The notes below the pieces were generated by a model. It was not told the origin of the DNA. It worked only from the letters and a program-made list of their open reading frames with translations, and did no database searches. From positions 1 to 64,000 of the IMG/VR virus record IMGVR_UViG_3300027573_000779: a stretch of 64,000 nucleotides of DNA, one strand, 5' to 3'. Below, piece after piece: positions 4,619-59,918 of this stretch; the stretch's first letter is position 1; each line of letters starts with the position of its first letter. The translations under genes were made by a program, and so were the position numbers.

Positions 4619-5722
4619 TTAATTCTTCAAAACCTGATACAATAATTTCTTTCTATCTTCTGAATCTAAACCCTTACCGTCCAACAGTTTAAACACAAAA
4701 GAAGCGCGATTTGTATTTCCGTATGCTTTAATAACTTCAAGCGCCTGTTCTTTTCGAGTTGGTAAATGCGCCAAACGACTGGTCACAAAAGTATTCATGC
4801 CTTGAATAATCTTTGCAACCTCTTTTGAACCGTCACAAATCCGCGATGCATCCCCTCTACATTGATTCCATAGCTCCCAATCAAATTGAGAAGTAATATT
4901 AGCTTCAAAGGTTCGATATTCAGGTTCACCTTGCGCAAACCACACATCCACAACTTTATCGAAAGAAGACAAAGCTTCCTTCATTCTGTGCAAGCTCAAA
5001 TACCACAAGGACTTACATTTATGGATTGCTTGACCGTCTTTAGAATAAACACAAACGCCCTCTTTGCCTTTCCATGTCTCGACATCAGTCATTAAAGCTT
5101 CAACTGAAGAAAATTGATAAGTAGAAGGTCGCTTAAATTCTAATGCTTTCGCAACTTCATCGAGTCTTTCCTGAGACCATAAAGTATAATCTAAATGTTC
5201 AACAACTCCAACCAAAATCCAATCGGGCTGTTCACCATAATTTAGAATGATTTTACGAGTAGGGGACACCCATTCAAAGAGCCAAGACTTTTTGCCCCAA
5301 TCTTTAATTGAATTATAAATCAAGTCAATTTTGTATAAAAGGGCTTGTTTAAAAACTTCAATCTCGTGCGCATTTTCTAAATCTTCAACATTTGAAGTGC
5401 CCCGAGTCCGAATGATATGTTTGCCTTTATACTTGGAAACAATCAACAGTGAGCCGTCTACTTTCTCAACGATAGTGGTCTTGTTAAGAGATTTTGGCAC
5501 TGGAAAGTGTTCTAGATTCTCGCCCCAATTCACAAATTTAGGAAAACCTGCCGAAACTAATTCTCCATCGTTATTCCAAAGGCTAGACCGCAATATCTTG
5601 TTATCTTGAGTCCACTTACATCCAATATGTTGGGGTTGGATTAACCACAATTGTTCCCCATCCAAAACATGCTGGTGAATCATGAATTGGGCGCGGTCAA
5701 TTAAATCTAAGTCAATTTTCAA
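4619..5722 (-). CDS. T4 Rnl1-like RNA ligase (nucleotidyltransferase)
   Basis: Motif I EKVDGSL, RTRG, LFEW, EGVCV, KCKS. Confidence 0.82.
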   Translation of the reverse strand: MKIDLDLIDRAQFMIHQHVLDGEQLWLIQPQHIGCKWTQDNKILRSSLWNNDGELVSAGFPKFVNWGENLEHFPVPKSLNKTTIVEKVDGSLLIVSKYKGKHIIRTRGTSNVEDLENAHEIEVFKQALLYKIDLIYNSIKDWGKKSWLFEWVSPTRKIILNYGEQPDWILVGVVEHLDYTLWSQERLDEVAKALEFKRPSTYQFSSVEALMTDVETWKGKEGVCVYSKDGQAIHKCKSLWYLSLHRMKEALSSFDKVVDVWFAQGEPEYRTFEANITSQFDWELWNQCRGDASRICDGSKEVAKIIQGMNTFVTSRLAHLPTRKEQALEVIKAYGNTNRASFVFKLLDGKGLDSEDRKKLLYQVLKN

Positions 5723-12996: not shown

Positions 12997-13070
12997 TGGC
13001 AGGCACAGTTGGTTACGCTCCAACGCCCCATGGTCCAAAGCCACGTACGCTACTATTACGCCATGTGCCA
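12997..13070 (-). tRNA. tRNA-Gln(UUG) with A18, A54, G55, U58 and a U1.U72 mismatch
   Basis: TGGCACA/TGTGCCT acceptor, CGTGG-CTTTGGA-CCATG anticodon arm, GTTGG-AGCGTAA-CCAAC T arm, GCCA. Confidence 0.9.
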
Positions 13071-14809: not shown

Positions 14810-15574
14810 TCAACCAGTGATTTTAGAGCGCGAAGTTGAAAGATTTTGTAAAGCCTCCTGTTCAGAAAGCCCTTTTAATTTTTCATCAAGAACGTTTTTG
14901 CTCCCTTTTTTGTTCTTATCGTCATCCAATAAGGCTATTTCAAGGTCCGCAAACGATTGATTGAGTTTGATTTGAACACTTTCTAGGGCAGTTTCAATAC
15001 AAATCTTATCAAAAGTGTCCCCTTCAATTTCTCCTGCCGCTTCGTTCATAGCCGCCGCCGCACAAGCCATCTTCCATTTCTTTTCTGTGCGTTTGATTGT
15101 CTCCGCAAAGTCCTGAAGAGTTACTTGGGCATCCTGATACACCCCTTGCCGATGTTCAAGCAATTGTCTCATTTTGGCCAACCGTTCTTTATAAACATCA
15201 GCGTCTTCAAGCCCGTCCTTCACGTATTGTTTAACTTGGTCCGCAAAAGTTAAAACCTGTGCCGAAAACTTACTAATATTTTCTTTATATTGGGCGAGCG
15301 CGTCTTGTTTCTTTATATACTGATTTTGTAATGTTTCAACGGGGTTTTTAGCGGACTCAGCTTTTAAGGCTTTTATACGCCAGTTTGCCATCTTCATTGC
15401 AAAGTATGGCAGAAAATTGATAATTCCCCAAGATATCCCGCCAGCAACCAAAAGACCAAATAATCCTTGAATGCTTAAAAAAACAAATGGAGCTACAAAA
15501 ACTCCTAGCACCCCAAGACCAATTACCTTCACTAATAATTCTATCCGTTTTCGTTTTTGTTCTAGGTCAGTCAT
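14810..15574 (-). CDS. Two-TM protein with long coiled coil (PspA/IM30-like architecture)
   Basis: Two N-terminal TM helices followed by ~170 aa of heptad helix ending KKWKMACAAAAMNEAAG. Confidence 0.55.
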   Translation of the reverse strand: MTDLEQKRKRIELLVKVIGLGVLGVFVAPFVFLSIQGLFGLLVAGGISWGIINFLPYFAMKMANWRIKALKAESAKNPVETLQNQYIKKQDALAQYKENISKFSAQVLTFADQVKQYVKDGLEDADVYKERLAKMRQLLEHRQGVYQDAQVTLQDFAETIKRTEKKWKMACAAAAMNEAAGEIEGDTFDKICIETALESVQIKLNQSFADLEIALLDDDKNKKGSKNVLDEKLKGLSEQEALQNLSTSRSKITG

Positions 15575-15948
15575 ATGTTTTGTAAAGATTTATATTTAAG
15601 TCTAATCAGTTCATCTAACGCTTTGCTTTGAACAATGGTTCCAGTTTCCCATCTTTTAACGCTTGCTACGCCAACATGTAAAAAACGCGCAAATTCTATT
15701 TGGGATAAATCTAATGAATTTCGAATTGCCAAAATCTCTTTTCCTGTTAAGAGATTTTGTTTTAGTCTATAAGCATCTACCGTATTCTTTCTTAATTCGT
15801 CTGCTTGTTCAAAGGTCACAGTTTTATATCCACACATAGTACATTCTTCGGCAGACGTAACAACTTCAAACTTTTCCCCATGAAACTCTTGTAAAATTGG
15901 GGCCTTCACTGTTTTAAACTCAGTATTGTTACAATCTAAACATATCAT
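15571..15948 (-). CDS. MqsA-like antitoxin (zinc ribbon + XRE HTH)
   Basis: CLDC...HGEKFEV...CTMCG zinc ribbon; IRNSLDLSQIEFARFLHVGVASVKRWETG HTH. Confidence 0.8.
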   Translation of the reverse strand: MICLDCNNTEFKTVKAPILQEFHGEKFEVVTSAEECTMCGYKTVTFEQADELRKNTVDAYRLKQNLLTGKEILAIRNSLDLSQIEFARFLHVGVASVKRWETGTIVQSKALDELIRLKYKSLQNI

Positions 15949-16497: not shown

Positions 16498-16625
16498 TTT
16501 GTTATTTGTTTTGTTTTTTTGTTTTGTCTGAAATTTACCCCAAAACACACCCTTAAAGCCCCGCATTTTCATTTGTTAGTTGTTTTTGCTCAAATTCGCC
16601 CCAAAAAAGCATAACAAGCCTTTTT

Positions 16626-16826
16626 GGGGGAAGACTCCTATTTACCTTACTCAACCCCTACTTCCGGCTCAGGGTCTTTCATCCGCCCTTCCCTGCTAGT
16701 CTTTCTATGTACGGGCAGAACACTAAGTATTTTAGTGAACTGTTGCGATACATCGCCTCACGGCTCGCTCCATCGTCATCCTACTCACACTCGGTAGAAG
16801 TATTTTCGTCGGATACTAGCAACCTC
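16626..16826 (-). ncRNA. Unnamed ~200-nt structured RNA with possible pseudoknot
   Basis: TGCTAGT/ACTAGCA, TTCTAC/GTAGGA, GCC-GTGA-GGC, CACTAA/TTAGTG, TCTGCCC/GGGCGGA, GGGAAG/CTTCCC; no ORF. Confidence 0.6.
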
Positions 16827-16835
16827 AATAGGATA

Positions 16836-17063
16836 TCAAACTTGTTTGTTTAAATTTTTAATAATAGCTCGAACAAGTCTAGGTTCCGCACGAACATATT
16901 GACAAGCCAAACATTCACAGGTCCAATCTTTTTTCTTGTGAAAAGCGTCAATAACATGCATTGTGCCAAGTACGTCTAAACCTACGTTACGAACTTTAGA
17001 TAAAGCTAGTTCTTCTTGTTGTTCTGGTGTCATAAAAAATGGAGCCAAAGATAGGATTTGCAC
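16836..17063 (-). CDS. Hypothetical protein
   Basis: ORF track; CECLAC motif; start may be at the internal MTPEQ. Confidence 0.55.
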   Translation of the reverse strand: MQILSLAPFFMTPEQQEELALSKVRNVGLDVLGTMHVIDAFHKKKDWTCECLACQYVRAEPRLVRAIIKNLNKQV

Positions 17064-17123
17064 CTACAAATGAGAATTCACAAAATTCTTCCTGTTCTAG
17101 TTGAGGCACTTCGGCAATAAAAC

Positions 17124-17199
17124 TGGAACGGTAGACAAGATTCGCACTTGCGTAAAGGTTGGTTGGAAGCCAACTGCCTGACTTCTAGGCTACTACCGC
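17124..17199 (-). tRNA. tRNA-Gly(UCC) with A18 and G55
   Basis: GCGGTAG/CTACCGT acceptor, GTTGG-CTTCCAA-CCAAC anticodon arm, T loop TGCGAAT, U73-CCA. Confidence 0.92.
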
Positions 17200-17215
17200 A
17201 TTGAAAATTCAAAAA

Positions 17216-17299
17216 GGGGTCAGGATACCAATCTGCCTTATTTCATTCGACAGTGACCCTCAAGCTTTCTAAAGGGTCTTCCAACCGGAACCCTGACCC
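17216..17299 (-). ncRNA. Three-way-junction RNA, copy A
   Basis: GGGTCAGG/CCTGACCC; GACCC-TTTAGAAAGCTTGA-GGGTC; CTGTC-GAATGAAATAA-GGCAG. Confidence 0.7.
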
Positions 17300-17301
17300 G
17301 A

Positions 17302-17375
17302 AAAGGACATTAACTGTCTTATTTCATTCAACAGCACCCCTCAGTTTCCAAAGGGGTTCGTTACGAATGTCCTTT
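17302..17375 (-). ncRNA. Three-way-junction RNA, copy B
   Basis: AAAGGACAT/ATGTCCTTT; ACCCC-TTTGGAAACTGA-GGGGT; CTGTT-GAATGAAATAA-GACAG. Confidence 0.7.
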
Positions 17376-17499
17376 AAAATTGAAGAGGGGCAACCTAACG
17401 TCATCAGATAACCCCAATCACTAACGTTGCGTTAATGAGAAGTAAATTAAAACAACCTTGGGATTTCACGAGCGTTCCAATGTCTATCCAAGGTTTACT

Positions 17500-18287
17500 A
17501 AGTCTGAGACTACAACTTAGATTACTAGTCTTTCCGAAGATTATCAAGGCTTTGCGAGCCTCTTTCCTCCGTTATCCTCATAAACCCTTTAATGGCATCT
17601 ATGAACCTAGCATGGCTGCATTTTTACAGGTTGCATTTCCTGCTACCCATCACTCTACTCGATGTTCACTTTCTGTCTAGCTTGCGGCCAGTTAAGGATT
17701 ATTAGTCCAACATGCAGCGAAACAATCAACTAAATCACCCCTTGCGAGGGCAATCCAGTCTCCATTACCTTGCGGCAGGAGAATTAAGCCACTTTCGAGT
17801 GACAGAGGAAACGTCTTTGCTTTTTATATCATAGAACGATATGTTGGGATTACACCAACGCATCTAACAGCGACGTGCGTTTCCTGTCGTTTCATATCCT
17901 TTTGGGATACAAAATGCGACACGCCGCTTGCCTTTCATCTTGCAGACTACTCAACCAGATTACTCGACTTTGGATAACTTTTTAAGGGTTATCCATTACC
18001 GTTTAACCTTGCTATTAAGCCCTTGCTTGCATGGCTTGAACTTAATAACTCCTCTTTGTCCTTAGCTGTCGCTGTTTGGCATGATAATATATTAGATTGC
18101 GAGTCTAATACCCCTACTCACCGATTGGCTCTGTAGGTTTAACTATCCAGCTTCCAGTTACCTCACGTTATCGTAAGGTCTCAGGACTGAGTTTGCCTGA
18201 ATATCCCTTTGGAAAGGGCGCGAGGTTAGTTAGCACCTTCGCCTTTCGCCGTCTTGCGACGGGTTATTTAACGTGGTCAGGCCCACA
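17500..18287 (-). ncRNA. GOLLD-like giant ornate ncRNA (~790 nt)
   Basis: ORF-free, many GNRA-capped hairpins (GTC-GCAA-GAC, CCCTC-GCAA-GGGG, CACTC-GAAA-GTG), 5' loop GCCTGA complementary to TCAGGC, 3' GAGTAG...GATAATC...GAAAGACTAG...GTAGTCTCAG as recalled for GOLLD; located within a tRNA cluster. Confidence 0.7.
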
Positions 18288-18305
18288 AAATCTACAAATT
18301 AAAAT

Positions 18306-18410
18306 ACCTAAGTTCAGGTCGCTCAATATACGGTATGACCGATTGAAACAGTTAGCTATGCTGCTCCAAGTTGCCGGAATGACCCGATTTTATGCCCTCA
18401 ACGCTTAGGT
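18306..18410 (-). ncRNA. Closed ~105-nt structured domain directly 3' of tRNA-Leu
   Basis: ACCTAAG/CTTAGGT closing stem, TTCCGG-CAAC-TTGGAG hairpin; starts 3 nt after the CCA. Confidence 0.4.
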
Positions 18411-18413
18411 AAA

Positions 18414-18490
18414 TGGTCCCTCTGGCCGTGGTTGCAACGGCACTGTCAAGCTTTTAAGGCTCGCGTCTCCTGCTCTTGGACTACAGAGGG
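18414..18490 (-). tRNA. tRNA-Leu(UAA) lacking the long variable arm; A18, G55
   Basis: CCCTCTG/CAGAGGG acceptor, CGAGC-CTTAAAA-GCTTG anticodon arm, 5-nt variable loop, GCCGT-TGCAACC-ACGGC T arm, ACCA. Confidence 0.87.
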
Positions 18491-18495
18491 TAAAA

Positions 18496-18570
18496 TGGTG
18501 CGGAAAGGGAGAAGTCGCACTCCCACCTTAAACTTGGCAAGTTCACGTTCTACTACTAAACTACTTCCGC
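18496..18570 (-). tRNA. tRNA-Gly(GCC) with A18, G55, an 8-nt T loop and A73
   Basis: GCGGAAG/TTTCCGC acceptor, TGAAC-TTGCCAA-GTTTA anticodon arm, GGGAG-TGCGACTT-CTCCC T arm. Confidence 0.87.
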
Positions 18571-19100
18571 ATTTTTAAGGCTTGTCTCGCATTTTTAATC
18601 TCTTCTTCAAAATTTTTAATCTCTTCTTCTAAATCCTCAAACTCTTGATGTGCTAAGATATGACATTTCCTGCAAAGAGTCTTTAAATCTTTAACGGTTG
18701 TATCGTAAAGGTTCCTATAAACCAAATGGTGGGGTTCAACCCTAGAAGGAGACCCGCATTTTTCACAAACCGGATTGAGCTTTAACTTCTCTCTTCTCAA
18801 AGCGAACCAATGTTCCGATTTCAGATACTCGGTTCTATAGTATTCCCTTTTATCATTAACGGGATGTTCCCCACGGATTGGGGTATCGTGATAAACGCCC
18901 AGTGAGCGAGGAATCTTAAACTTAGATTTCAGCCTTCTGTTTATCTTCTTGTTGAAGATTCTCATCCCTTCCCAATCAAACCCTCTCTTCTTTTTTCGTT
19001 TTATAACGCCTTTAGGTAACATAAAGTAATGGGATTTTTTCCCTACCTCCGTTGGTAGCACCAATGTCTCCATTGATACCGGCGTCTCCGAACTTCCCAC
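18561..19100 (-). CDS. HNH endonuclease (true start likely MLPKG at ~19022)
   Basis: CEKCG...EPHHLVY...DLKTLCRKCHILAH. Confidence 0.85.
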   Translation of the reverse strand: MGSSETPVSMETLVLPTEVGKKSHYFMLPKGVIKRKKKRGFDWEGMRIFNKKINRRLKSKFKIPRSLGVYHDTPIRGEHPVNDKREYYRTEYLKSEHWFALRREKLKLNPVCEKCGSPSRVEPHHLVYRNLYDTTVKDLKTLCRKCHILAHQEFEDLEEEIKNFEEEIKNARQALKMRK

Positions 19101-19413: not shown

Positions 19414-19911
19414 TTACAATTCTTTGCCATCCAACCCCACAAGAGTTGAAACCCTCTTCCAACCATACGTTTTCATCTGTTCTTCATTCATGGTGTCAAG
19501 GCTGGCTTCGGGACTAATCACAAAAATGGAAATATTCTTCTCTCGTATGGTTTTTAGATATTTTTTGACAATAATTTCAAGAGAATAAGCTGATTGTTGA
19601 GCGTATTGAGGGTCGATTCTAAGAACGACCAAGCTGTTAGGTTCAATCTCATCTATCTTGATTATCTTATCTAACTTTAGACCAATTTCAACGTCTGTCT
19701 CTTGTTTAAGCCAACGAATAAATTTATCTTGAACATCCTGTGAGACCCCTTGCCCCTTCATTAATTCTTCGACAGAAGCATATCTTCTCCCGGTAGGTTT
19801 AATTTCTTCTGGATTTTTTAAAGGATGATTATCGTTCAGAGGATTTTCACATCCTACATCGTCATCTTCTGTTGTTCGGCCCATATAAATTCTTTCTTTA
19901 TTATGCTGCAA
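19414..19911 (-). CDS. Hypothetical protein
   Basis: ORF track; follows the PurA-like gene. Confidence 0.6.
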   Translation of the reverse strand: MQHNKERIYMGRTTEDDDVGCENPLNDNHPLKNPEEIKPTGRRYASVEELMKGQGVSQDVQDKFIRWLKQETDVEIGLKLDKIIKIDEIEPNSLVVLRIDPQYAQQSAYSLEIIVKKYLKTIREKNISIFVISPEASLDTMNEEQMKTYGWKRVSTLVGLDGKEL

Positions 19912-21241
19912 CCATCTCTTTTTTCAAGTTTAAAAAAGACATCTTATCGTTTGCCATTTCCCCATAAGATTTAATACCTATAGGGACATTTAACATATCA
20001 GTAAGAATATTAGGAATTGCTTCCCCTTCTACTTTTTCCGATTCACAATTAACTTTACCGAGAGTTTTACCTAGTTCTTCCTGATTAACTAAAAATGACA
20101 TATGGGGTTTTTTAAGTTCCCAAAGTTTTCCATTTAAATTATAGCCAGTGTTAATATACCATGGATTGATTTCATTAATTCTATCACAATGAGAAACCGC
20201 CAAATAATCTACCCCACCGTTAACTTCTAGGGCATATTTTAAAAGGGGAATATCTAACATGCCCGTTCTAAATCTTCCTTGCCATGGACCAGTTGTATTA
20301 GCTGTGTCTTGTAAATTCCAAGGCATTTCAGTTGGAAAAGGTCCTGCGCCGTGTCTGGTGGCATAAATTCTAGTTACACCAATCTCAACAATGTTAGATT
20401 CTAATAACCCCAAGCCAGCTTCATTTAAAACCTTATATACGTTTTCTGTGGTTGTATTACTCCAAGTTGTGTGGGGGTGAAAACCCCATTTTTCATCTAG
20501 TAATATGCCTTGAGCGCCCTCAAAAACAGGATTATTGGAACCTTTTAGCAATTCTGAAACCTGTTGAGCGTCTATGATGTTAATTTTTTTGCTTAATTCC
20601 TGATATTCTTTAGCTATACGGTCAGTAAAACGCAAATCTCTGAAAAACTTAGCATGAGAACCTATAAAATTATAGAAATCAACCCCTTCCCTGTCTAGGC
20701 GCGAAATCATCGCCCTAAAGGTAAGCCAAAGCTTTTCATGGGTAATATCATAATTCTTAAGGTCTTTAACCCGTAAAACATTATCTCTCTTTAAACTGTC
20801 TAAAACTGTTTCTCCAATCCCCACTCCACACGAGCCATGACGATTATTGTTTCTACTCTCTTCTAACATCCTGTTAGCCGCAACATGAAATGGGGTAGTA
20901 ACCAAAGCTCGTTCATCTACATAAATTGATTCAAAGTTTCCCCCTTTGCGCCAAGTATTTGCACTTAAAACCTCTTCTTCTTTTATTAAGGATAAGGGGT
21001 TAAATAAAACGTGCTTAGTGAGTAATGTTTTAACGTTCCGATTGACTAAAGTTCCACTGCCAAACTGAGCAAAAACGTGAGAGTCGCCACTTGAAGTAAC
21101 AACTCTGTGGGCACATTGAGCGCCGCCATTATATCTGATAACTAAATCAGAATTGTTTTGACGGACAAGAAAGTCAACAACACTTCCTTTTGTTTCGTCG
21201 CCGTGTTGCAGACCCACAACTATGAAAACATTTTTGTCCAT
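19901..21241 (-). CDS. Divergent adenylosuccinate synthetase-like protein (start revised to MDKNV)
   Basis: GDETKG, RYNGGAQCAH, FEGAQGILLD, TRHGAGPFPTE, GRFRTG. Confidence 0.9.
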   Translation of the reverse strand: MDKNVFIVVGLQHGDETKGSVVDFLVRQNNSDLVIRYNGGAQCAHRVVTSSGDSHVFAQFGSGTLVNRNVKTLLTKHVLFNPLSLIKEEEVLSANTWRKGGNFESIYVDERALVTTPFHVAANRMLEESRNNNRHGSCGVGIGETVLDSLKRDNVLRVKDLKNYDITHEKLWLTFRAMISRLDREGVDFYNFIGSHAKFFRDLRFTDRIAKEYQELSKKINIIDAQQVSELLKGSNNPVFEGAQGILLDEKWGFHPHTTWSNTTTENVYKVLNEAGLGLLESNIVEIGVTRIYATRHGAGPFPTEMPWNLQDTANTTGPWQGRFRTGMLDIPLLKYALEVNGGVDYLAVSHCDRINEINPWYINTGYNLNGKLWELKKPHMSFLVNQEELGKTLGKVNCESEKVEGEAIPNILTDMLNVPIGIKSYGEMANDKMSFLNLKKEMVAA

Positions 21242-21310
21242 AAATTTGAAAAAAAGGGAGAGGAAAGGCAACCATAACCATTCCTCTCCCGGTGTGCGAA
21301 CCCGAACCAA

Positions 21311-40572: not shown

Positions 40573-43500
40573 ATGACAAAAACTTTAACTCAGGACGCTA
40601 CCTCTATTAATTTTGAACAGGAAATTTCAAACTATATTTTTGTTAGTCGTTACAGTAGATTTAATGAAAAGTTAGGGAGAAGAGAAACATGGGATGAGGC
40701 AGTTAGTAGGTTGGAAACCATGCACTTAAAGAAATTTAATTATCTTTCAAAGGAGGATAAGGATGAAATTAAGTGGGCGTTTGATATGGTTAGAGCAAAA
40801 CGGGTCGTTCCTTCGATGCGAAGTTTACAGTTCGGAGGCAAAGCAATTGAAGCTCATCAAGCTAGAATTTTCAACTGTAGTGTTCGGCATGTAGATTCTA
40901 TTCGTTCTTTTGCTGAGATAATGTATCTTTTGCTTTGTGGATGCGGGGTAGGTATTGGAGTAAGCAGGTTTTTTCTTCGTCGCTTGCCTGATTTGGTAGA
41001 TGCTAAAGATAAAACTGGAACAGTTGTCACTTATAGTATTGAGGATAGTATGGAGGGGTGGGCTGATTCAGTTGAAGCTCTTTTGATGTGTTATTTTAAG
41101 AATACTCCCTATACAGGTAGGAAGATTTGTTTTGATTATTCTAAAATTAGAAAAAAAGGAACGCCTCTTAAGACTGGAGGAGGTAAAGCTCCGGGTTACA
41201 AAGGCTTAAAAAACACTCATCTGAAAATTAAAGCTCTTCTTGACCATATTATTGAAAATAAAAAACAACTTCGACTTAAATCTATTGATGCTTATGATAT
41301 TTTAATGCATTGTGCCGACGCCGTTCTTTCAGGGGGAATTAGACGCTCAGCTACTTCGGTTATTTTTGATGAAGACGACGAAGATATGATGAATGCTAAA
41401 ACCTCATTTAAAGTAACTAAAAAAAGTGGGTTTGAAGAAGATGGGACCTCTGTTGTTGGTGGAAAGACCTATCAGTTATACAACGGCAAAGTTACTGTTG
41501 ATGGCCTAACCTATTATGTCACTTTGAAAGAATATGAATACGAACAGCTTAAGAAAAGCGGAACAATTAGCTGGATGCATATTCAACCCCAAAGAGCAAG
41601 GTCTAACAATAGCATTTTACTTCTAAGGGATAAAATAACGTATGAGAAGTTCAATGAGATGGTACAAAGAACCCGTCAATGGGGAGAACCGGGATTTGTA
41701 TTTGCTAATCATCCTTGGACCCTACTGAACCCCTGTTTTGAGATAGGGTTTATTCCTATTACCGACGATGGAGTTTGCGGCACCCAGTTTTGTAACCTCA
41801 CTTCTATCAACGGGAAAAAGATTACCTCTTTTCAAGACTTTAAAGAATGTGGCAAGGCAGCTTCATTAATAGGAACACTCCAAGCGGCTTATACTTACTT
41901 CTCTTATCTTTCACAAGCAGCACAGGAAGTAAGCGAGCAAGAAAGTTTATTGGGCGTAAGCCTAACAGGATGGATGGATTCTCCGTCCGTTCTCTTAAAT
42001 GAGGAAAATCAAAGAAAGGTAAGTTCTCTCGTGGTAGAAACAAACAGGATTTGGGCTAAGAAAATTGGCGTAAATCAGGCAGCAAGAACAACATGCGTAA
42101 AACCCGAGGGTTGCGTTTCAGCCGATACTTTAATTTTATCTAATGAAGGTATTTTATATTTAGATGAGGTTGGGGATATTAATGGTAAAGAATGGCAAAA
42201 TCATCAAATAAATATTAGTTCTGCGTTAGATATTAAAGCATCAGATAAATTTTTTGTTAATGGACGCAAAAACGTATTAAAAATTAAATTTAACAGTGGA
42301 TTTGAATTTACTGGAACCCTCAATCATAAAGTTCAAGTTGTCAATAGTCACGGAATAGAATGGAAACAGCTTGATAATTTACAAAAAGGGGATGCTGTTG
42401 TTTACAGAATTGGTGGATACGATAGTGCTTTTGGGTCTTATCAAAAGCTCAAGAAGCCCTCATTTGTATTACATAAAAACTCTCATAACACACAAGAAAT
42501 AATATGCCCCCCTATCTTAGACGAAGAACTTGCTTGGTTCCTCGGTCTTTATTTAGGAGACGGTTCGAATCACGAGAAAGGGATACGTATTTCAGGCAAC
42601 CGAAAAGATGTGTCAGATTTAGATAAAGCGAATAAGATAGTTAATAAATATTTTGGCATATCTTTTACTACTAGTAATTATCAAAAAGATGAATTAGATA
42701 ATAGAATTCAATATTATTTCAATTCAATACAATTGCTTAAGTTTTTGGAAGAGAATGGCCTTTTGAAACCTAAATCTCAAGACATTGAAATCCCTAAGAT
42801 TGTTCGTCAGTCTCCTAAATCTGTAATTGAATTTTATTTAGATGGGTATGCAGCAGCAGATGGATGTGATGAGAGTCGAACTAGGAGTTACCATACTGTT
42901 TCTGAGAAGATGGCAAAGCAACTACCAATAGTTTTAAGAGCTATAGGAAAAGATTGTAAAGTTCGCAAATATAAGCCTTCCAAAGGGTCGTTCGGCACAA
43001 ATGAAAAATATTGGATACAAGAACGAAAGAGCTTAAATGGTAATATAAACAGGAATAGCCGTTTAGATAAAAAAATATACAATATATTAAAGGCAAGCGG
43101 CTACAGTAGCCATTTATATGATGTGGTTGACAATGTTGTTTATGGGGCGAATGAGCCAACCTATGATATTTCGGTTCCAGACGAACATGCCTATATTGCT
43201 AATAGCTTTGTTTCCCACAACACATCATCTTTAGTCCTAGGCACTGCCTCAGGCATTCACCCACATCATTCTAGAAGATATTTCAGAAGAGTTCAATGTA
43301 ACACAGAAGACAATGTGTATAGACACTTTAAAAAGACCAATCCCAAACTTTGTGAGCCTTCAGTATGGTCCGCCAATAAAACAGACGATGTAATTACTTT
43401 TCCAGTCACGGTTTCTGATGAAGCAATGGTTAAAAGTGACCTTTCTGCTATTGAACATTTGGAAATTATCAAATCTGTTCAAAAAAATTGGGTAATTAAC

Positions 43501-43827
43501 GGAACAACCGAAGCAAACAAGAAGGATTTGACTCATAATGTCTCATGCACCGTTATCGTTAAAGATGACGAGTGGGACAAGGTAATCGATTATCTTTATC
43601 TAAACAGAGAGTATTTTGCTGCCGTTTCTCTTTTGCCAGAAACTGGAGATAAAGACTTTCCTCAAGCTCCAATGGAGGCCGTTATAACTCCAGAAGATGA
43701 AGAACATTGGGAGGAAATTATTAGTAATTTTAAGTCCGTAGATTATACCAAACTTAAAGAAGAAGAAGATAATACTGCCCTTTCCCAAGAAGGCTCTTGT
43801 TATGGTGGAGCCTGTCAAATAATATAG
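40573..43827 (+). CDS. nrdJ: Class II (B12-dependent) ribonucleotide reductase containing an intein
   Basis: RSLQFGG, FNCS, NPCFEI, FCNL, TTCVKPEG|T, C-terminal CYGGAC. Confidence 0.9.
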   Translation: MTKTLTQDATSINFEQEISNYIFVSRYSRFNEKLGRRETWDEAVSRLETMHLKKFNYLSKEDKDEIKWAFDMVRAKRVVPSMRSLQFGGKAIEAHQARIFNCSVRHVDSIRSFAEIMYLLLCGCGVGIGVSRFFLRRLPDLVDAKDKTGTVVTYSIEDSMEGWADSVEALLMCYFKNTPYTGRKICFDYSKIRKKGTPLKTGGGKAPGYKGLKNTHLKIKALLDHIIENKKQLRLKSIDAYDILMHCADAVLSGGIRRSATSVIFDEDDEDMMNAKTSFKVTKKSGFEEDGTSVVGGKTYQLYNGKVTVDGLTYYVTLKEYEYEQLKKSGTISWMHIQPQRARSNNSILLLRDKITYEKFNEMVQRTRQWGEPGFVFANHPWTLLNPCFEIGFIPITDDGVCGTQFCNLTSINGKKITSFQDFKECGKAASLIGTLQAAYTYFSYLSQAAQEVSEQESLLGVSLTGWMDSPSVLLNEENQRKVSSLVVETNRIWAKKIGVNQAARTTCVKPEGCVSADTLILSNEGILYLDEVGDINGKEWQNHQINISSALDIKASDKFFVNGRKNVLKIKFNSGFEFTGTLNHKVQVVNSHGIEWKQLDNLQKGDAVVYRIGGYDSAFGSYQKLKKPSFVLHKNSHNTQEIICPPILDEELAWFLGLYLGDGSNHEKGIRISGNRKDVSDLDKANKIVNKYFGISFTTSNYQKDELDNRIQYYFNSIQLLKFLEENGLLKPKSQDIEIPKIVRQSPKSVIEFYLDGYAAADGCDESRTRSYHTVSEKMAKQLPIVLRAIGKDCKVRKYKPSKGSFGTNEKYWIQERKSLNGNINRNSRLDKKIYNILKASGYSSHLYDVVDNVVYGANEPTYDISVPDEHAYIANSFVSHNTSSLVLGTASGIHPHHSRRYFRRVQCNTEDNVYRHFKKTNPKLCEPSVWSANKTDDVITFPVTVSDEAMVKSDLSAIEHLEIIKSVQKNWVINGTTEANKKDLTHNVSCTVIVKDDEWDKVIDYLYLNREYFAAVSLLPETGDKDFPQAPMEAVITPEDEEHWEEIISNFKSVDYTKLKEEEDNTALSQEGSCYGGACQII
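42112..43221 (+). mobile_element. 370-aa intein with LAGLIDADG homing endonuclease
   Basis: Starts CVSADT after KPEG, ends VSHN before Thr; LAWFLGLYLGDGS and FYLDGYAAADG. Confidence 0.95.
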
Positions 43828-44987: not shown

Positions 44988-45004
44988 AAAAATTCCCTCT
45001 CTGA

Positions 45005-45010
45005 GTGTAA
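45005..45010 (+). promoter_or_regulatory. GTGTAA motif upstream of the glycosylation cluster
   Basis: GTGTAATATATAG. Confidence 0.4.
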
Positions 45011-45187
45011 TATATAGTGAGTGTTAAATCAATTAAAGAAGTAGGTCAATAACAACACCGAAAAAGTCCCTCGCCAGATTTAACACATCGATGGTCATAC
45101 TTACGATGATGACCTTTCCCAAATAAACATTAATGGCGAGGCATTTTTATTGGAAATTTCAGTGCTTAAAATTATGATATCCAATAG

Positions 45188-45556
45188 ATGATAGATACTA
45201 GTGCCAAGCCCGAAATAGTTAAAAAAGGTTGGGGCGAAGAAGTAATCATTGTTAATAATGATGAATACTGCGGAAAAATTCTAAAAATAAATGCGGGGCA
45301 CGAATTTTCGTTTCATTTCCATAAACTAAAACTAGAAACTTTTTATGTGCTTAAAGGAATTGCTGCTTTAAAATATCTAGATTTAGCTACCGGAGAAGAG
45401 CTTCAGGCAACTCTACAAAAGGGAGACATTGTTCATATCCCAAGATGCGAACCTCATCAAATTAGTGCCGACTTTGATACCGAAATCATCGAATTTTCAA
45501 CCCATCATGAAGATTCAGACAGCTACAGAATCGCAAAGGGTGACTCCCAAAGGTAG
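45188..45556 (+). CDS. Cupin (sugar isomerase-like)
   Basis: KGWGEE, FHFHKLKLETFYV, PHQ. Confidence 0.85.
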   Translation: MIDTSAKPEIVKKGWGEEVIIVNNDEYCGKILKINAGHEFSFHFHKLKLETFYVLKGIAALKYLDLATGEELQATLQKGDIVHIPRCEPHQISADFDTEIIEFSTHHEDSDSYRIAKGDSQR

Positions 45557-45559
45557 ACT

Positions 45560-46435
45560 ATGATTATTGCAACTTGCGGGGGTATTGGGGACCAAATACT
45601 AGCCTTTCAAGCGGCTAATAGGTTTTGTGCTGAAGGCGGTAATTGTAAGCCTATTATTTACTCATTCTCCAGAAAGGAAGTTTTTGAAGTTTTGTTTACT
45701 TTGTTTGGAAATTATTTCCAGATAAAACATATAGATGATGAAGCTGAACATAAGTTATTAAACGACGAAACTTATAGGAACAAGGTTTTCAAAGACAATG
45801 AATTTGGTTTGGTTTGGCCTGACCTTTTGTGGTCGCACCCATTATCTCTAAAACTTTATGATAGTCACATACAGATAGTTAAACAAATAAGGCTTTTAAC
45901 TAAACATTTAATTCCTGAAAATATTATCTATTTTGGTTTAAATACAACTACTAATGGATATCTTTATAATAATATTGGACAGTTACTTTTAAATACTGCT
46001 AGATTGTTACCAAACCATACAGTTTATTTTCCCAAAATTGATAAATGGAACGCAACGCCCATTAACATAGATTTAGAGTTTGACTTTCCTAAAAACGTCC
46101 ATATTGATACCAATCCAACCTTCCTTAAGAGTCTTGATTATTTAAAGAGAAGCTGTTATGGGGTTTTTGCCGACAATGGCCCTTCTCATATTGCCTATCA
46201 ATTAGGACTGCCCAGACTGGTTTTGGATTCTAGGTTTGGTTTTAATGGGCTTCCATGGGCCGCTCGTTGGAGACAAGACCTTACAGAATCAATTCCTATT
46301 TCTTCCAGTCCTTCAGAAATTGCTAGACTTATTAAAACCAACATTGAAGTCCCCCAAACCTGTCTAATTCCTAGACATACAGTTTTAGTTAATCAAGACG
46401 TAGATTGGAAACAAGTTCTTATAATCAAATACTAG
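45560..46435 (+). CDS. GT9-like glycosyltransferase
   Basis: GGIGDQI, ADNGPSHIA. Confidence 0.7.
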   Translation: MIIATCGGIGDQILAFQAANRFCAEGGNCKPIIYSFSRKEVFEVLFTLFGNYFQIKHIDDEAEHKLLNDETYRNKVFKDNEFGLVWPDLLWSHPLSLKLYDSHIQIVKQIRLLTKHLIPENIIYFGLNTTTNGYLYNNIGQLLLNTARLLPNHTVYFPKIDKWNATPINIDLEFDFPKNVHIDTNPTFLKSLDYLKRSCYGVFADNGPSHIAYQLGLPRLVLDSRFGFNGLPWAARWRQDLTESIPISSSPSEIARLIKTNIEVPQTCLIPRHTVLVNQDVDWKQVLIIKY

Positions 46436-46436
46436 T

Positions 46437-47351
46437 ATGAAAGTTTTAGTTTTAGGTGGATGCGGTTACGTAGGGTCGGCACTTTGTCCTTATTTAAAAA
46501 CTAACGGAATTGAAGTATTTTCTGTTGATTTAGAATGGTTTGGCAATCCAGCGAACATTCCTAATAGAATTTTGGATATGTCTGATATATTGGATATTTC
46601 TCATATAATGCCTTTAGATTATGATGCAATTGTTTTGCTGGCTGGCCATTCAAGCGTCAAAATGTGTTTAAATAATCTTCTTCCAACTTTTAAAAACAAC
46701 GTTCAGAACTTTGTTGAATTGCTTGGCAAGGTTAAAAAGGGCACAAAATTCATTTATGCCAGTAGTTCCAGCGTCTATGGCAAAGTTAATCGTAGTATAA
46801 TGGACGAAAACTGTATTGAGTATGTTTGTAGTAACTATTATGATTTCTCAAAGTTTGAAATCGATAGTTATATGAAAATGAATCAAGACGTTGAGTATTA
46901 TGGTCTTAGGTTTGGAACCATAAATGGCTTTTCTCATAATTTCAGAAACGACATTATGTTGAATTCAATGTATGCGACCGCAATGTCAGACAAAGAAATC
47001 AGAGTTAATAATTTACAAGTAAGAAGACCAATACTTGGAATGTATGATTTATGCAAAGCTATTCTAACTATTCTTAAAAAAGGTTCGTTTGAAAAGCGCG
47101 GAATTTACAATTTAGCTTCATTTAATGGAAGCGTCGATGCTATTTCTCAAAGAGCCGCTAAAATATTAGAGGTTCCAGTTCGTTATATGACCGATACAGA
47201 TGCCTATGATTTTGCCATTTCAACCGGAAAATTTGAAAACACTTTTAAATTTAATTTTGTAGAAACTGTTGATAGTATTTTGTTTAGTATTACAGAAAAC
47301 AAAGATAATTTAGTAATGTCAAATCGTAACCAGCCTAAGTTTTATGATTAA
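46437..47351 (+). CDS. NAD-dependent epimerase/dehydratase (extended SDR)
   Basis: GGCGYVG, ASSSSVYG, YDFSK, LRFGT. Confidence 0.9.
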   Translation: MKVLVLGGCGYVGSALCPYLKTNGIEVFSVDLEWFGNPANIPNRILDMSDILDISHIMPLDYDAIVLLAGHSSVKMCLNNLLPTFKNNVQNFVELLGKVKKGTKFIYASSSSVYGKVNRSIMDENCIEYVCSNYYDFSKFEIDSYMKMNQDVEYYGLRFGTINGFSHNFRNDIMLNSMYATAMSDKEIRVNNLQVRRPILGMYDLCKAILTILKKGSFEKRGIYNLASFNGSVDAISQRAAKILEVPVRYMTDTDAYDFAISTGKFENTFKFNFVETVDSILFSITENKDNLVMSNRNQPKFYD

Positions 47352-48132
47352 AATTGGAGTTACCGCAATTGGTTATAATTGCAACGAACATTTAGCGGCT
47401 GTTCTAAAACCTTGGATGGAACTAAAAGAAGCCTGTCTTTTTGGTAATTTAATTAAGTCTGTTCATATAGCATTTACTCATGGATGCTTTACTGAAACTG
47501 CGCAACTGGGCTATCCAATAATATCCACAGATGGGACTATAGAATACTTAAAAGCTCTTCATGAACTTGGTGATAGTGGAATTGATTTTTTAGACATTAA
47601 AGAAACTCCGCAGCTTGAATATGAGATGTGGACCAATAATTTACCTTATCTCTTTAGTAAAGACATTGATTTGTTGGTAATGCTTAACGCGGACGAACTA
47701 TGGGAGATTAATGAAATTATTAAAGCTGTAACCTACATTAAAGAAACAGAATTCATTGATTATTTTAAAGTTAATTTTAAAAACTATTGTATCGATTATA
47801 ATCATTATGTTTCAGACTTCATAGTCCCCCGTATTTGGTGGGCTAAAAAGAATGGAGGGATTAAAAGGTTTTATCGAGATGACCTGCTTGAATATAATAA
47901 CGGAAAAAGAGATGTGGAGGTTTCCCATAAGGTTATTTCCCCTAATATTATTTTCCCCAAACATTATTCTTGGGTAGGGTCAAAAGAATACCTTCAGCGC
48001 AAATTAGGATTTCAAAAGCTCCGTTATGGCAACTGTTCTTATGCTTGGGATGAAGTTAATGACAGGCTTATGCTGAATGAAGAGTTTTATAAAACTACCG
48101 GATTACCTAAACCAGAGATTTTAAGCGTATGA
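47344..48132 (+). CDS. GT-A-fold glycosyltransferase-like protein
   Basis: LNADELW DxD-like motif; cluster context. Confidence 0.55.
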   Translation: MIKIGVTAIGYNCNEHLAAVLKPWMELKEACLFGNLIKSVHIAFTHGCFTETAQLGYPIISTDGTIEYLKALHELGDSGIDFLDIKETPQLEYEMWTNNLPYLFSKDIDLLVMLNADELWEINEIIKAVTYIKETEFIDYFKVNFKNYCIDYNHYVSDFIVPRIWWAKKNGGIKRFYRDDLLEYNNGKRDVEVSHKVISPNIIFPKHYSWVGSKEYLQRKLGFQKLRYGNCSYAWDEVNDRLMLNEEFYKTTGLPKPEILSV

Positions 48133-49373
48133 GTTATACAACAATAACCAAGTGCCGACTTTGTAAATCAACATCTTTAGATAAAATGTTGGATTTTGGC
48201 GAAGTTCCATTGGCAAATGACTATCCAGAAAAGATAGATTCACCGGTTGAAGCCTATCCCCTTACAGTTTCAAAATGTAAAGGGTGTGGACACGTTCAAC
48301 TAAATGAAACAGTGTCGCCGGAAAGGTTGTTTTCTAATTATACTTATGCCAGTTCAGATTCACCAGCCCTAGTTAAGCATTTTACCGAATATGCAAACAC
48401 GGTAACAAGTAAATTTCGTTTGGGTGATTACTCTCAGATACTAGAATTGGGAATGAATGATGGTGTGCTGCTTGACCAATTTCAGAAGTTGGGACTACTA
48501 CAGCTATTTGGCGTTGACCCCGCTAAAAACATTTGCGAGCTAGCGCAAGAAAAATTAGGGTTTCCAACTAAGATTATAAACGATTTCTTTAATGAGGAAA
48601 CGGCTCTTAAGATGCGAAAACAACATGGGATGTTTGATATTATTTGTGCTAACAACGTCTTTGCTCATGTGGCTGATTTAGATAGTTTTACTAGCGGGGT
48701 GAAAATTTTATTGAGCAAAAATGGGACGTTTATATTTGAAAACGCTTATTTATTTGATACAATAAACAATCTTTATTTGGACCAATTTTATTCAGAACAC
48801 CTACAATATTATGGCATTCTTCCTCTTGTTCAATATTTAGATAAGTTTAAGTTAAAAATCTTTGATATCCAACACGTTAACACTCAAGGAGGTTCTTTTA
48901 GGATATTTGCTTCTCACAAGGACGATACACGAACAGAGCCTATAGTTCAACAATGGATAGACGAAGAGTTGCAGTTTGGTCTCTATAATGAGGACACTTA
49001 TAAAGATTTTAAATTTAGTTTAAATGACCTTCAAGAATCCATGAAAAATACTATGGATTGGATGAAGGAGAACAATTATACTGTTTCTTGTTATGGGTGC
49101 CCTGCAAAATTTGCACTTTTAAGTAAGTTTTTTAACTTTAATCGGGACAATATTCGGTATGTCGTTGACGATTCACCTTTAAAATATGGGAGGTTTTCTC
49201 AGGGTGCGAAAATTCCCATTGTTAATAACCAACATTTTAAAGCCAACCCAACTGATTATACTATCATTTCTACTTGGAATATGGCGGCATCGATTATGGA
49301 ACGAAACCCTAGTTACAACGGGACATGGATAGTTCCTTTACCTGAAATTAAATTTTATGGACCAAAATCCTAA
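48129..49373 (+). CDS. NDP-hexose C-methyltransferase
   Basis: CRLC...PLAN...CKGCGHVQL Zn domain, ELGMNDG, ANNVFAH, YSEH, YGCPAK, DDSPLK. Confidence 0.9.
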   Translation: MSYTTITKCRLCKSTSLDKMLDFGEVPLANDYPEKIDSPVEAYPLTVSKCKGCGHVQLNETVSPERLFSNYTYASSDSPALVKHFTEYANTVTSKFRLGDYSQILELGMNDGVLLDQFQKLGLLQLFGVDPAKNICELAQEKLGFPTKIINDFFNEETALKMRKQHGMFDIICANNVFAHVADLDSFTSGVKILLSKNGTFIFENAYLFDTINNLYLDQFYSEHLQYYGILPLVQYLDKFKLKIFDIQHVNTQGGSFRIFASHKDDTRTEPIVQQWIDEELQFGLYNEDTYKDFKFSLNDLQESMKNTMDWMKENNYTVSCYGCPAKFALLSKFFNFNRDNIRYVVDDSPLKYGRFSQGAKIPIVNNQHFKANPTDYTIISTWNMAASIMERNPSYNGTWIVPLPEIKFYGPKS

Positions 49374-50277: not shown

Positions 50278-50279
50278 AA

Positions 50280-50684
50280 ATGAACCCAATTCTTAATTTT
50301 GGTCCCGCATATCAAGACGATAGGGGAGTAATTCAAATGGTGGTTGAAGACACGAAGTTCTCTAGTGTATCGGTAATTATAAGTGTTGCTGGTTCAAGTA
50401 GGGCACGGCATTGGCACAAGCAGGATTCTCATATTTGTTTTGTTGTTAAGGGAGAGATTGAATATTACGAACGACCAGTAAACTTAAACATTAAACCAGA
50501 AAAACATATTATTAAAGCTGGCCAACTGTTTTATACTGGACCTTATGTAGAACATGAAATGGTTTTTACTCAGGATACCGAATTTTGGTGTTTTAGTAGT
50601 TTGAGTAGAAAAAACGCGGATTACGAACAAGATACTACTAGGTTTTCTTATTCGTTAAAAGAATTGTATGACAAATCTGTTTGA
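50280..50684 (+). CDS. Cupin (RmlC/WxcM-like sugar epimerase/isomerase)
   Basis: DDRG, RARHWHK, EH. Confidence 0.78.
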   Translation: MNPILNFGPAYQDDRGVIQMVVEDTKFSSVSVIISVAGSSRARHWHKQDSHICFVVKGEIEYYERPVNLNIKPEKHIIKAGQLFYTGPYVEHEMVFTQDTEFWCFSSLSRKNADYEQDTTRFSYSLKELYDKSV

Positions 50685-57192: not shown

Positions 57193-57193
57193 A

Positions 57194-59916: not shown

Positions 59917-59918
59917 TT

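What the first reader, a model, noticed from the sequence alone, without database searches (positions are those of the whole stretch)
17500..18287. GOLLD-like giant RNA embedded in the tRNA operon
Seen: ~790 ORF-free nt dense in GNRA hairpins with a likely 5' pseudoknot, co-oriented with flanking tRNAs. Known: GOLLD RNAs are ~800-nt phage RNAs found beside tRNAs, with unknown function. The family call rests on recalled 3' motifs.
Basis: partly seen in the sequence, partly recalled or inferred. Interest (0 to 1): 0.68.

Follow-up and report, generated by a model that had tools for sequence, protein, structure and literature searches.

The report
GOLLD RNA in a phage tRNA cluster
This is a genuine, full-length GOLLD RNA, a known family of about 800-base phage RNAs that build hollow RNA-only cages. 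It sits among the tRNA genes of a 209-kb uncultured phage and is a trimmed-down copy with no built-in tRNA and two side hairpins missing.

Summary
Rfam's GOLLD model (RF02032) matches window 17929-17501 on the minus strand over its whole length, at 194.3 bits against a family cut-off of 150 (E 3e-53). That model covers only the conserved 3' half.

The 5' half (18287-17932) is homologous to the 5' domain of a large clade of GOLLDs that I collected from viral and metagenome contigs. Two covariance models built without the window hit it end to end. It shares a strand with four flanking tRNA genes, two on each side.

This copy is a divergent, reduced member:
- It has no tRNA in the internal linker; 32 of 39 clade members have one.
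- It lacks two 5'-domain hairpins, including the clade's near-invariant GAAA hairpin.
- The self-pairing GC in loop L21a is replaced by AU, which is still self-complementary.
- The 10-bp long-range pairing and loop L21b are intact.

The most likely function is that of the family: a self-assembling RNA cage made during infection. Its purpose is unknown. This is a new member of a known kind, of modest interest.

The parts
17501..18291 (-). Full-length GOLLD RNA (about 790 nt). The 3' end follows the Rfam model. The 5' end is inferred, about 5 nt upstream of the first hairpin.
   Evidence: Rfam RF02032 hit; models R3 and R1, built without the window; MFE z = -5.1
17501..17929 (-). Conserved 3' domain, which forms the ring of the cage in solved GOLLDs
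   Evidence: RF02032, 194.3 bits, model 1-416/416. My count from the printed alignment gives 89 of 98 consensus pairs standard
17932..18287 (-). 5' domain (the cap domain in solved GOLLDs), clade-specific type
   Evidence: nhmmer to relatives. R3 hits 18314-18193 at 36.5 bits, E about 4e-9. R1 hits 18192-18051 at 24.2 bits, E about 7e-6. Clade consensus: 99 pairs, 96% standard, 80 covarying
18273..18286 (-). First 5' hairpin (H0), which marks the start of the conserved RNA
   Evidence: Aligned to the clade's first hairpin by R3; clade alignment A6
18117..18133 (-). Clade-invariant motif CAGAGCC-AA-UCGGUGAG (hairpin H10 of the multi-branched 5' sub-domain)
   Evidence: Invariant in 39/39 sequences of A1; kept in the R1 alignment
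18134..18160 (-). Site where the clade's near-invariant GUCC-GAAA-GGAU hairpin is missing
   Evidence: R1 alignment: 10 model positions deleted and 3 flanking pairs non-standard; A1/A2 alignments
17868..17929 (-). Long hairpin that opens the 3' domain (Rfam model 1-62)
   Evidence: alignment; 22 of 23 pairs standard
17812..17867 (-). Internal linker (J13/15 of the literature), short and without a tRNA
   Evidence: Low-posterior variable region of the Rfam alignment; no tRNA found by ARAGORN or Rfam
17843..17859 (-). Linker hairpin GUUGG-UGUAAUC-CCAAC. It aligns with the T-arm of tRNAs nested in relatives and may be a tRNA remnant (inference).
   Evidence: Alignment; fold (weak, z = -1.9)
17797..17806 (-). 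5' strand of the 10-bp long-range pairing (the Rfam pseudoknot)
   Evidence: 10/10 standard pairs with 17655-17646
17646..17655 (-). 3' strand of the 10-bp long-range pairing
17696..17708 (-). P21a/L21a hairpin. The loop is CUAAUAA, with AU (17702-17701) where the family has the self-complementary GC. The stem has only 3 good pairs.
   Evidence: Rfam alignment; clade alignments; L21a role from PMC12286853
17677..17691 (-). P21b/L21b hairpin with the conserved CGCAA loop
18298..18326 (-). Weak sigma-70-like promoter candidate: TTGAGC (18326-18321), 17 nt, TTTAAT (18303-18298). Inference only.
   Evidence: Read from the sequence; not called by the scanner. Relatives L143 and L205 carry strong sigma-70 matches at the same relative position.
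17440..17495 (-). Terminator-like 8-bp hairpin (17495-17454) followed by a U-rich tract, just after the GOLLD 3' end. Inference only.
   Evidence: Fold. Not called by the scanner because the loop is long.
18414..18570 (-). Upstream tRNA-Gly(GCC) and tRNA-Leu(UAA)
17043..17199 (-). Downstream tRNA-Gly(UCC) and a second tRNA seen only by Rfam. Its anticodon loop UUUGUGA reads as UGU, Thr.

Best explanation
Window 18291-17501 (minus strand) encodes a complete GOLLD RNA of a 209-kb uncultured phage, placed inside a cluster of phage tRNA genes.

It has the family's two-domain build:
- A 5' domain of about 355 nt. It starts with four small hairpins, followed by a multi-branched sub-domain closed by a long-range helix, then three more hairpins.
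- The universally conserved 3' domain of about 430 nt.
- A short single-stranded linker between them.

By analogy with the solved GOLLD structures, the RNA is expected to assemble with copies of itself into a closed, dihedral RNA-only cage. The 3' domains would form the ring, the 5' domains the caps, and the linker would point inward.

This copy is a reduced variant. It carries no tRNA in the linker. It lacks two peripheral 5' hairpins, one of them the clade's near-invariant GAAA hairpin. It also has AU instead of GC at the self-pairing dinucleotide of loop L21a.

In solved GOLLDs, loss of comparable peripheral helices goes with a change of subunit number from 14 to 12. I therefore expect a cage, but possibly not a 14-mer.

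What is shown: family membership, extent, strand, domain homology, and which helices are kept or lost. What is inferred: transcription from its own weak promoter or with the tRNAs, cage assembly, and stoichiometry. What the cage is for remains unknown. The absence of a nested tRNA here shows that a covalently tethered tRNA is not required for a GOLLD to be maintained.
For: Family membership: RF02032 scores 194.3 bits against a cut-off of 150, E 3e-53, over the full model. It is the only large-RNA hit. By my count 89 of 98 consensus pairs are standard, and the 10-bp long-range pairing is 10/10.

5' domain:
- Single-sequence nhmmer finds collinear relatives (L106, E 2e-8).
- About 80 loci carry both domains in the same order.
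- The clade's 5' consensus has 99 pairs, 96% standard and 80 covarying, against 30-43% standard in slid controls.
- Models built without the window hit it over their full length: R3 at 36.5 bits, E about 4e-9 for 18314-18193, and R1 at 24.2 bits, E about 7e-6 for 18192-18051.

Folding: z = -5.1.

Phage context: PHROG and Pfam hits and a 208,933-bp IMG/VR contig. tRNAs flank it on the same strand.

Reduced features:
- No nested tRNA, against 32 of 39 relatives that have one.
- Two hairpins deleted.
- L21a GC changed to AU, seen in the clade only here and in L143.
- L21b loop CGCAA kept.

Cage assembly and the dependence of stoichiometry on peripheral helices come from PMC12286853 and PMC12990946.
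Against: - No expression data exist for this phage and its host is unknown.
- This copy is the most divergent member of its clade. Its best nhmmer score to any relative is 93 bits, and its Rfam score of 194 compares with 260-330 for many others.
- The P21a stem is only 3 pairs, and nine 3'-domain pairs are non-standard.
- In the sequence-only MAFFT alignment only 50 of 99 clade 5' pairs are standard in the window row. The structure-aware alignments recover most of them, but R1's score is modest.
- Cap contacts cannot be transferred from env-38, because its 5' domain is a different subtype beyond the first roughly 110 nt.
- The promoter and terminator are weak consensus matches that the scanner did not call.
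Confidence: 0.9

Rival explanations
1. It is a decaying GOLLD relic. The gene descends from a functional GOLLD with a nested tRNA, but it has lost the tRNA, two 5' hairpins and the strong L21a contact, and it no longer assembles or functions.
For: It is the most divergent member of its clade. It lacks a hairpin that is near-invariant in the other 38 full-length relatives. The P21a stem is only 3 pairs and GC is replaced by the weaker AU. The linker hairpin looks like a leftover T-arm.
Against: Both domains are complete from end to end. About 91% of 3'-domain pairs and the 10-bp long-range pairing are kept. Many helices differ from relatives by compensatory changes rather than disruptions. GC to AU keeps self-complementarity, which neutral decay would rarely do. 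Functional solved GOLLDs also lack comparable helices: Sag GOLLD lacks P9, P11a-c and P21b and still forms a 12-mer (PMC12990946). Six other clade members also lack the tRNA.
Confidence: 0.08
2. It is not GOLLD but another large structured RNA, such as a group I or II intron remnant or a new family, that happens to resemble GOLLD.
Against: The full-length RF02032 match is 44 bits above the curated cut-off. No other family reaches E <= 1 in 16500-19000. The 5' half is homologous to that of about 80 other loci that also carry the GOLLD 3' domain.
Confidence: 0.01
3. The region is a long spacer or leader of the tRNA operon with no product of its own. It would be structured only because it serves tRNA processing.
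For: It is co-oriented with tRNAs on both sides, and no strong promoter or terminator was called.
Against: The sequence and structure are conserved, with covariation, across phages whose flanking tRNAs differ. Relatives have their own sigma-70 promoters directly upstream. Solved GOLLDs are autonomous folded particles (PMC12286853).
Confidence: 0.01

Closest known systems
GOLLD RNA family (Rfam RF02032; Weinberg et al. 2009, as cited in PMC12286853)
   Same: Full-length match to the family model. About 800 nt, with a variable 5' domain and a conserved 3' domain. Encoded by a phage next to tRNA genes. The long-range 10-bp pairing is kept.
   Different: The score is in the lower part of the range seen here (194 bits against 150-331 for other loci). 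The linker is short and carries no tRNA.
env-38 GOLLD, the 833-nt 14-subunit cage (PDB 9MEE; PMC12286853)
   Same: Same 3' domain architecture, including P21 with two hairpins (L21a, L21b) and a linker after the first 3' hairpin. The 5' domain starts the same way: a small hairpin, a GNRA hairpin, a large-loop hairpin and another GNRA hairpin (one search compared).
   Different: Beyond about 110 nt the 5' domains are not alignable by eye. The window has AU where env-38 and most of the family have GC in L21a. The window lacks the GAAA hairpin that I take, as an inference, to be the counterpart of env-38's conserved L11a.
Streptococcus agalactiae GOLLD, the 700-nt 12-subunit cage (PDB 9L0R; PMC12990946)
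   Same: A naturally reduced GOLLD that lacks peripheral helices (P9, P11a-c, P21b) and still assembles. It is the best precedent for a trimmed member such as this one.
   Different: Different helices are missing: the window keeps both P21 hairpins and two of the three branches of the multi-branched 5' element.
Mycobacterium tRNA-array GOLLDs with a tRNA embedded in J13/15 (Morgado et al. 2020, cited in PMC12990946)
   Same: GOLLD inside a tRNA array. 32 of 39 members of the window's own clade have such an embedded tRNA.
   Different: The window's linker has no tRNA, only a 17-nt T-arm-like hairpin.
ROOL RNA
   Same: A phage or prophage RNA near tRNA islands that forms RNA-only cages (PMC12286853).
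   Different: Unrelated sequence and fold. There is no ROOL hit in the window.

Membership tests
GOLLD (RF02032) | Covariance-model score at or above the curated gathering score (150 bits) over the conserved 3' domain | tested here: met
   194.3 bits, E 3e-53, model 1-416/416, not truncated
GOLLD (RF02032) | Conserved long-range pairing (pseudoknot) between the segment after the linker and the segment after P21 | tested here: met
   17806-17797 pairs with 17655-17646, 10/10 standard pairs
GOLLD (RF02032) | Two-domain RNA of about 700-850 nt: a variable 5' domain plus the conserved 3' domain | tested here: met
   About 790 nt. The 5' domain is matched by R3 and R1, which were built from relatives only. 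Clade members are 759-837 nt.
GOLLD (RF02032) | Structure supported by covariation | tested here: met
   For the clade's 5' domain, 80 of 99 pairs covary and 96% are standard, against 30-43% in slid controls. The window itself keeps most helices in the structure-aware alignments.
GOLLD (RF02032) | Encoded by phages or prophages, typically beside or within tRNA clusters | tested here: met
   208,933-bp IMG/VR contig with phage genes. tRNAs lie within 126 nt upstream and about 300 nt downstream on the same strand.
GOLLD (RF02032) | Self-complementary dinucleotide in L21a and conserved L21b loop (symmetric kissing contacts B8 and B9 of env-38) | tested here: inconclusive
   The L21b loop CGCAA is kept. 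L21a has AU instead of GC: still self-complementary, but weaker and on a 3-bp stem. The mapping to env-38 nt 656-657 rests on my count of offsets.
GOLLD (RF02032) | Assembly into a closed homo-oligomeric cage (12- or 14-mer) | not testable with these tools
   Needs in-vitro transcription plus mass photometry or cryo-EM (PMC12286853, PMC12990946).
GOLLD (RF02032) | Expression rising during lytic growth | not testable with these tools
   Uncultured phage with unknown host. Only weak promoter-like and terminator-like sites were found.
GOLLD clade with the CAGAGCC..UCGGUGAG 5' domain (defined here) | Near-invariant GUCC-GAAA-GGAU hairpin in the multi-branched 5' sub-domain | tested here: not met
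   Deleted in the window and present in all 38 other full-length members aligned in A1
GOLLD clade with the CAGAGCC..UCGGUGAG 5' domain (defined here) | Invariant CAGAGCC-NN-UCGGUGAG hairpin and the closing long-range helix | tested here: met
   18133-18117. The closing helix is aligned by R1.
Group I / group II introns | Match to the Rfam intron models | tested here: not met
   No hit at E <= 1 in 16500-19000

The most novel reading that the evidence does not exclude
This is a naturally minimised GOLLD. It has no tethered tRNA, lacks the GAAA hairpin that I equate with the conserved pore-facing L11a loop, and carries an AU-for-GC swap at the symmetric L21a contact. It would still form a cage, but with a different subunit number or a more easily opened equator than env-38. 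That would make it a natural test of which parts of GOLLD are needed for assembly and which for the unknown function.
Probability: 0.3. Interest if true: 0.45.

Novelty: new member of a known kind. Interest (0 to 1): 0.28.

Why it matters
GOLLD function is still unknown, but its structures are now solved. Natural variants that lack specific parts are therefore useful.

This copy shows that within one clade a GOLLD can persist without three features:
- the embedded tRNA, which speaks against models in which storing or presenting a covalently linked tRNA is the essential role;
- the near-invariant GAAA hairpin;
- the GC dinucleotide in L21a.

The GC to AU change is a double substitution that keeps self-complementarity. 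It adds a third palindrome type to the GC/CG covariation used to argue that the L21a-L21a contact is biologically real (PMC12286853).

Beyond that, the locus is an ordinary example of a known family.

Tried and rejected
1. DNA similarity to deposited phages: blastn of 17000-18700 against INPHARED found nothing.

2. Close relatives of the phage through a neighbouring protein: only the window's own contig came back.

3. The genome-contig scan with the 15-base pattern CAGAGCCNNTCGGTGAG was too unspecific for 596 Gb. None of the 120 loci returned contained a GOLLD, so nothing can be said about hosts or prophages.

4. The MAFFT-only alignment of the window's 5' domain to the clade misplaces helices: only 50 of 99 pairs are standard. 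mafft-qinsi is not installed. I replaced it with covariance models R1 and R3.

5. Model R2 of the P21 region was too clade-specific to align diverse GOLLDs, giving 9 hits in 100 sources. The L21a tabulation therefore rests on an nhmmer alignment.

6. Mapping the env-38 cap contacts onto the window was abandoned. The env-38 5' domain differs beyond the first roughly 110 nt, and the supplement text holds no contact table.

7. The strict GNRA tetraloop count is not enriched.

8. The promoter/terminator scanner found nothing convincing for the GOLLD itself. Its hits inside the RNA are structural hairpins.

That part rests on nhmmer and MFE only.

Full report
**Observation**

Rfam's GOLLD model (RF02032) matches window 17929-17501 on the minus strand. 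The score is 194.3 bits against a gathering score of 150, E 3e-53, with all 416 model positions matched and no truncation. It is the only non-tRNA family found in the 64 kb. With permissive filters nothing else reaches E <= 1 in 16500-19000.

By my count of the printed alignment, 89 of 98 consensus pairs are standard. The 10-bp long-range pairing that Rfam annotates as a pseudoknot (17806-17797 with 17655-17646) is 10/10.

No ORF of 100 aa or more lies between 16572 and 18561. The 791-nt RNA folds at -246 kcal/mol, z = -5.1. GCAA occurs 14 times, against 3.1 +/- 1.8 in same-size windows. Strict GNRA tetraloops on stems of 3 or more pairs number only 4, which is not unusual.

All six tRNA genes of the window are on the same (minus) strand. 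The four that flank the GOLLD are:
- Gly(GCC) at 18570-18496 and Leu(UAA) at 18490-18414, upstream;
- Gly(UCC) at 17199-17124 and an Rfam-only tRNA at 17115-17043, downstream.

**Setting**

The window is the first 64 kb of a 208,933-bp uncultured viral contig (IMGVR_UViG_3300027573_000779 = Ga0208454_1000014). Its genes are phage-like. They include an HNH endonuclease, a PurA-like adenylosuccinate synthetase, a ribonucleotide reductase, a thymidylate synthase, a RecA-like protein, a T4 Rnl1-like RNA ligase and a subtilase with an Ig domain. No deposited phage matches at the DNA level.

**Extent and the 5' half**

The Rfam model covers only the conserved 3' domain. To test the other half I collected GOLLD loci by motif scans of viral and metagenome contigs.

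- A single-sequence nhmmer search with 18300-17930 found collinear matches upstream of other GOLLD 3' domains (L106, E 2e-8).
- Iteration defined a clade marked by the invariant motif CAGAGCC-NN-UCGGUGAG.
- About 80 loci carry this 5' domain followed by the 3' domain in the same order.
- 39 distinct full-length members are 759-837 nt long.

The clade's 5' domain has a consensus of 99 pairs. Of these, 96% are standard and 80 covary. When the partners are slid by 1-3 columns, only 30-43% are standard.

The window is the clade's outlier. Its best score to any relative is 93 bits, and a sequence-only alignment misplaces its helices (50 of 99 pairs). I therefore built covariance models from relatives only.
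- R3 (the 5' end) hits 18314-18193 over the full model at 36.5 bits, E about 4e-9. The four opening hairpins are all kept, the first at 18286-18273.
- R1 (the multi-branched sub-domain) hits 18192-18051 over the full model at 24.2 bits, E about 7e-6.
- The last three hairpins (18050-17932) are supported by nhmmer and by the MFE fold.

**How this copy differs**

1. Linker. In 32 of 39 clade members ARAGORN finds a tRNA or tRNA-like gene nested in the linker. The anticodons are varied, and several have odd anticodon loops. The window has none. Its short linker (17867-17812) holds only a 17-nt hairpin (17859-17843) that aligns with the T-arm of the nested tRNAs. This may be a remnant, but the evidence is weak.

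2. 5' domain. The R1 alignment shows two deletions. One is a side hairpin of 31 model positions replaced by 4 nt; three other members have only a short version of it. The other is the GUCC-GAAA-GGAU hairpin, which the other 38 aligned full-length members all have. This hairpin is the first of three branches on one stem. That matches the literature's P11 with P11a-c and the statement that L11a is a conserved, non-contacting GAAA loop facing the pore (PMC12286853). The equation is my inference and was not tested.

3. L21a. In env-38, nucleotides 656-657 of L21a pair with the same nucleotides of another chain, and the dinucleotide covaries between GC and CG (PMC12286853). Counting from the published env-38 sequence places these at the GC of the first P21 hairpin loop in the Rfam consensus. 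In the window that position reads AU (17702-17701), on a stem with only 3 good pairs. Among about 70 distinct clade sequences nearly all have GC, and only the window and L143 have AU. AU is also self-complementary, so the symmetric contact is possible but weaker. The second hairpin, L21b, keeps its CGCAA loop (17691-17677).

**Transcription (inferred)**

Relatives carry sigma-70 promoters directly upstream of the first hairpin. L143 has TTTACA-17-TATAAT and L205 has TTGACA-17-TATACT.

At the same relative place the window has only a weak match: TTGAGC (18326-18321), 17 nt, TTTAAT (18303-18298). The scanner did not call it. It would put the 5' end near 18291.

Just past the 3' end, an 8-bp hairpin (17495-17454) is followed by a U-rich tract.

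Co-transcription with the upstream HNH gene and tRNAs is equally possible. That unit has a promoter-like site at 19198-19171.

**Mechanism**

GOLLD RNAs assemble without protein into closed dihedral cages. The 833-nt env-38 RNA forms a 14-mer, with the 3' domains as the ring, the 5' domains as the caps and the linker inside (PMC12286853). The 700-nt S. agalactiae GOLLD lacks P9, P11a-c and P21b and forms a 12-mer. Its 3' domain alone forms mainly a 10-mer (PMC12990946).

The window keeps the 3' ring domain, the long-range pairing and L21b. I therefore expect it to assemble. Because it lacks peripheral 5' helices and has a weakened L21a, the subunit number may differ from 14.

The biological role is not known for any GOLLD. 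Current proposals are encapsulation, or 'inhibited storage' of the embedded tRNA (PMC12990946). This tRNA-less copy, and six others in the clade, argue that a tethered tRNA is not essential.

**Rivals**

- A decaying relic is possible but unlikely (about 0.08). The completeness of both domains, the compensatory changes and the palindrome-preserving GC to AU swap all speak against neutral decay.
- An intron remnant or a new family is excluded.
- A mere operon spacer is excluded by covariation across phages whose flanking tRNAs differ.

**Verdict**

This is a new, reduced member of a known family. It is useful as a natural deletion variant but not surprising.

Noticed in passing
window 17217-17299 and 17305-17376, minus strand: Two paralogous structured elements lie between the GOLLD and tRNA-Gly(UCC). 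Each has a 9-10-bp outer stem enclosing two hairpins, and the second hairpin has an identical 11-nt loop, GAAUGAAAUAA. The outer stems differ by compensatory changes; folding z is -4.3 and -2.9. There is no Rfam hit at E <= 1. A strict 19-base pattern finds no other copy in IMG/VR. They are not tRNAs, and their function is unknown.
   Followed up: partly
L178:6487-6897 (IMGVR_UViG_3300032562_000003, 258,859 bp); L224 is identical over the compared stretch; L203 and L232 have the same hit pattern: This is a 'mini-GOLLD' of about 410 nt. The complete clade 5' domain runs straight into the last roughly 50 nt of the 3' domain, so nearly all of the supposedly universal 3' domain is missing. tRNA-Met, Gly and Gly follow it.
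   Followed up: partly
Relatives, linker at about nt 420-505 of each GOLLD (e.g. L152, L185, L239, L252, L172): The tRNAs nested in GOLLD linkers have many different anticodons. Lys-CUU, Arg-UCU and Leu-UAG are the commonest. Six of 32 have abnormal anticodon loops that ARAGORN reports as tRNA-???, and others read as His-AUG or Ile-UAU. This suggests that some are not ordinary decoding tRNAs.
   Followed up: no
window 17043-17115 and 13000-13070, minus strand: Two tRNA genes are found by Rfam (43.7 and 44.3 bits) but missed by ARAGORN. By eye their anticodon loops read UGU (Thr) and UUG (Gln). The first overlaps the mechanical ORF 16836-17063.
   Followed up: partly
window 18561-19100, minus strand: An HNH endonuclease ORF has a 3' end that overlaps the first 10 nt of tRNA-Gly(GCC). 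This is typical of a homing endonuclease lodged in a tRNA cluster. A promoter-like site (TTGACA-16-TAGCAT with an upstream TG) lies at 19198-19171.
   Followed up: no
window 19901-21310, minus strand: A PurA-like adenylosuccinate synthetase. Its PHROG family is named as the PurZ-type enzyme, and it is at most 38% identical to mycobacteriophage homologues. I did not test whether it is a true PurZ (2-aminoadenine DNA). No DatZ or MazZ partner was recognised among the neighbours scanned.
   Followed up: partly
window 4619-5722, minus strand: A T4 Rnl1-like RNA ligase (Pfam RNA_lig_T4_1, E 1e-10). This is the enzyme class that reseals cleaved tRNA anticodon loops, and it sits in the same genome arm as the tRNA genes and the GOLLD.
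   Followed up: no
window 15571-15948, minus strand: An MqsA-type antitoxin-like HTH protein is encoded by the phage (Pfam E 3e-10). No MqsR-like toxin was looked for.
   Followed up: no
window 45000-60000, plus strand: A run of sugar-modification genes (C-methyltransferase at 48129-49373, DegT-type aminotransferase at 58699-59916). This is unusual cargo for a phage and was not examined further.
   Followed up: no
window 40573-43827, plus strand: The ribonucleotide reductase ORF is 1084 aa, but its PHROG RNR match covers only residues 16-517, with unrelated weak matches further on. It may contain an insertion such as an intein. This was not checked.
   Followed up: no
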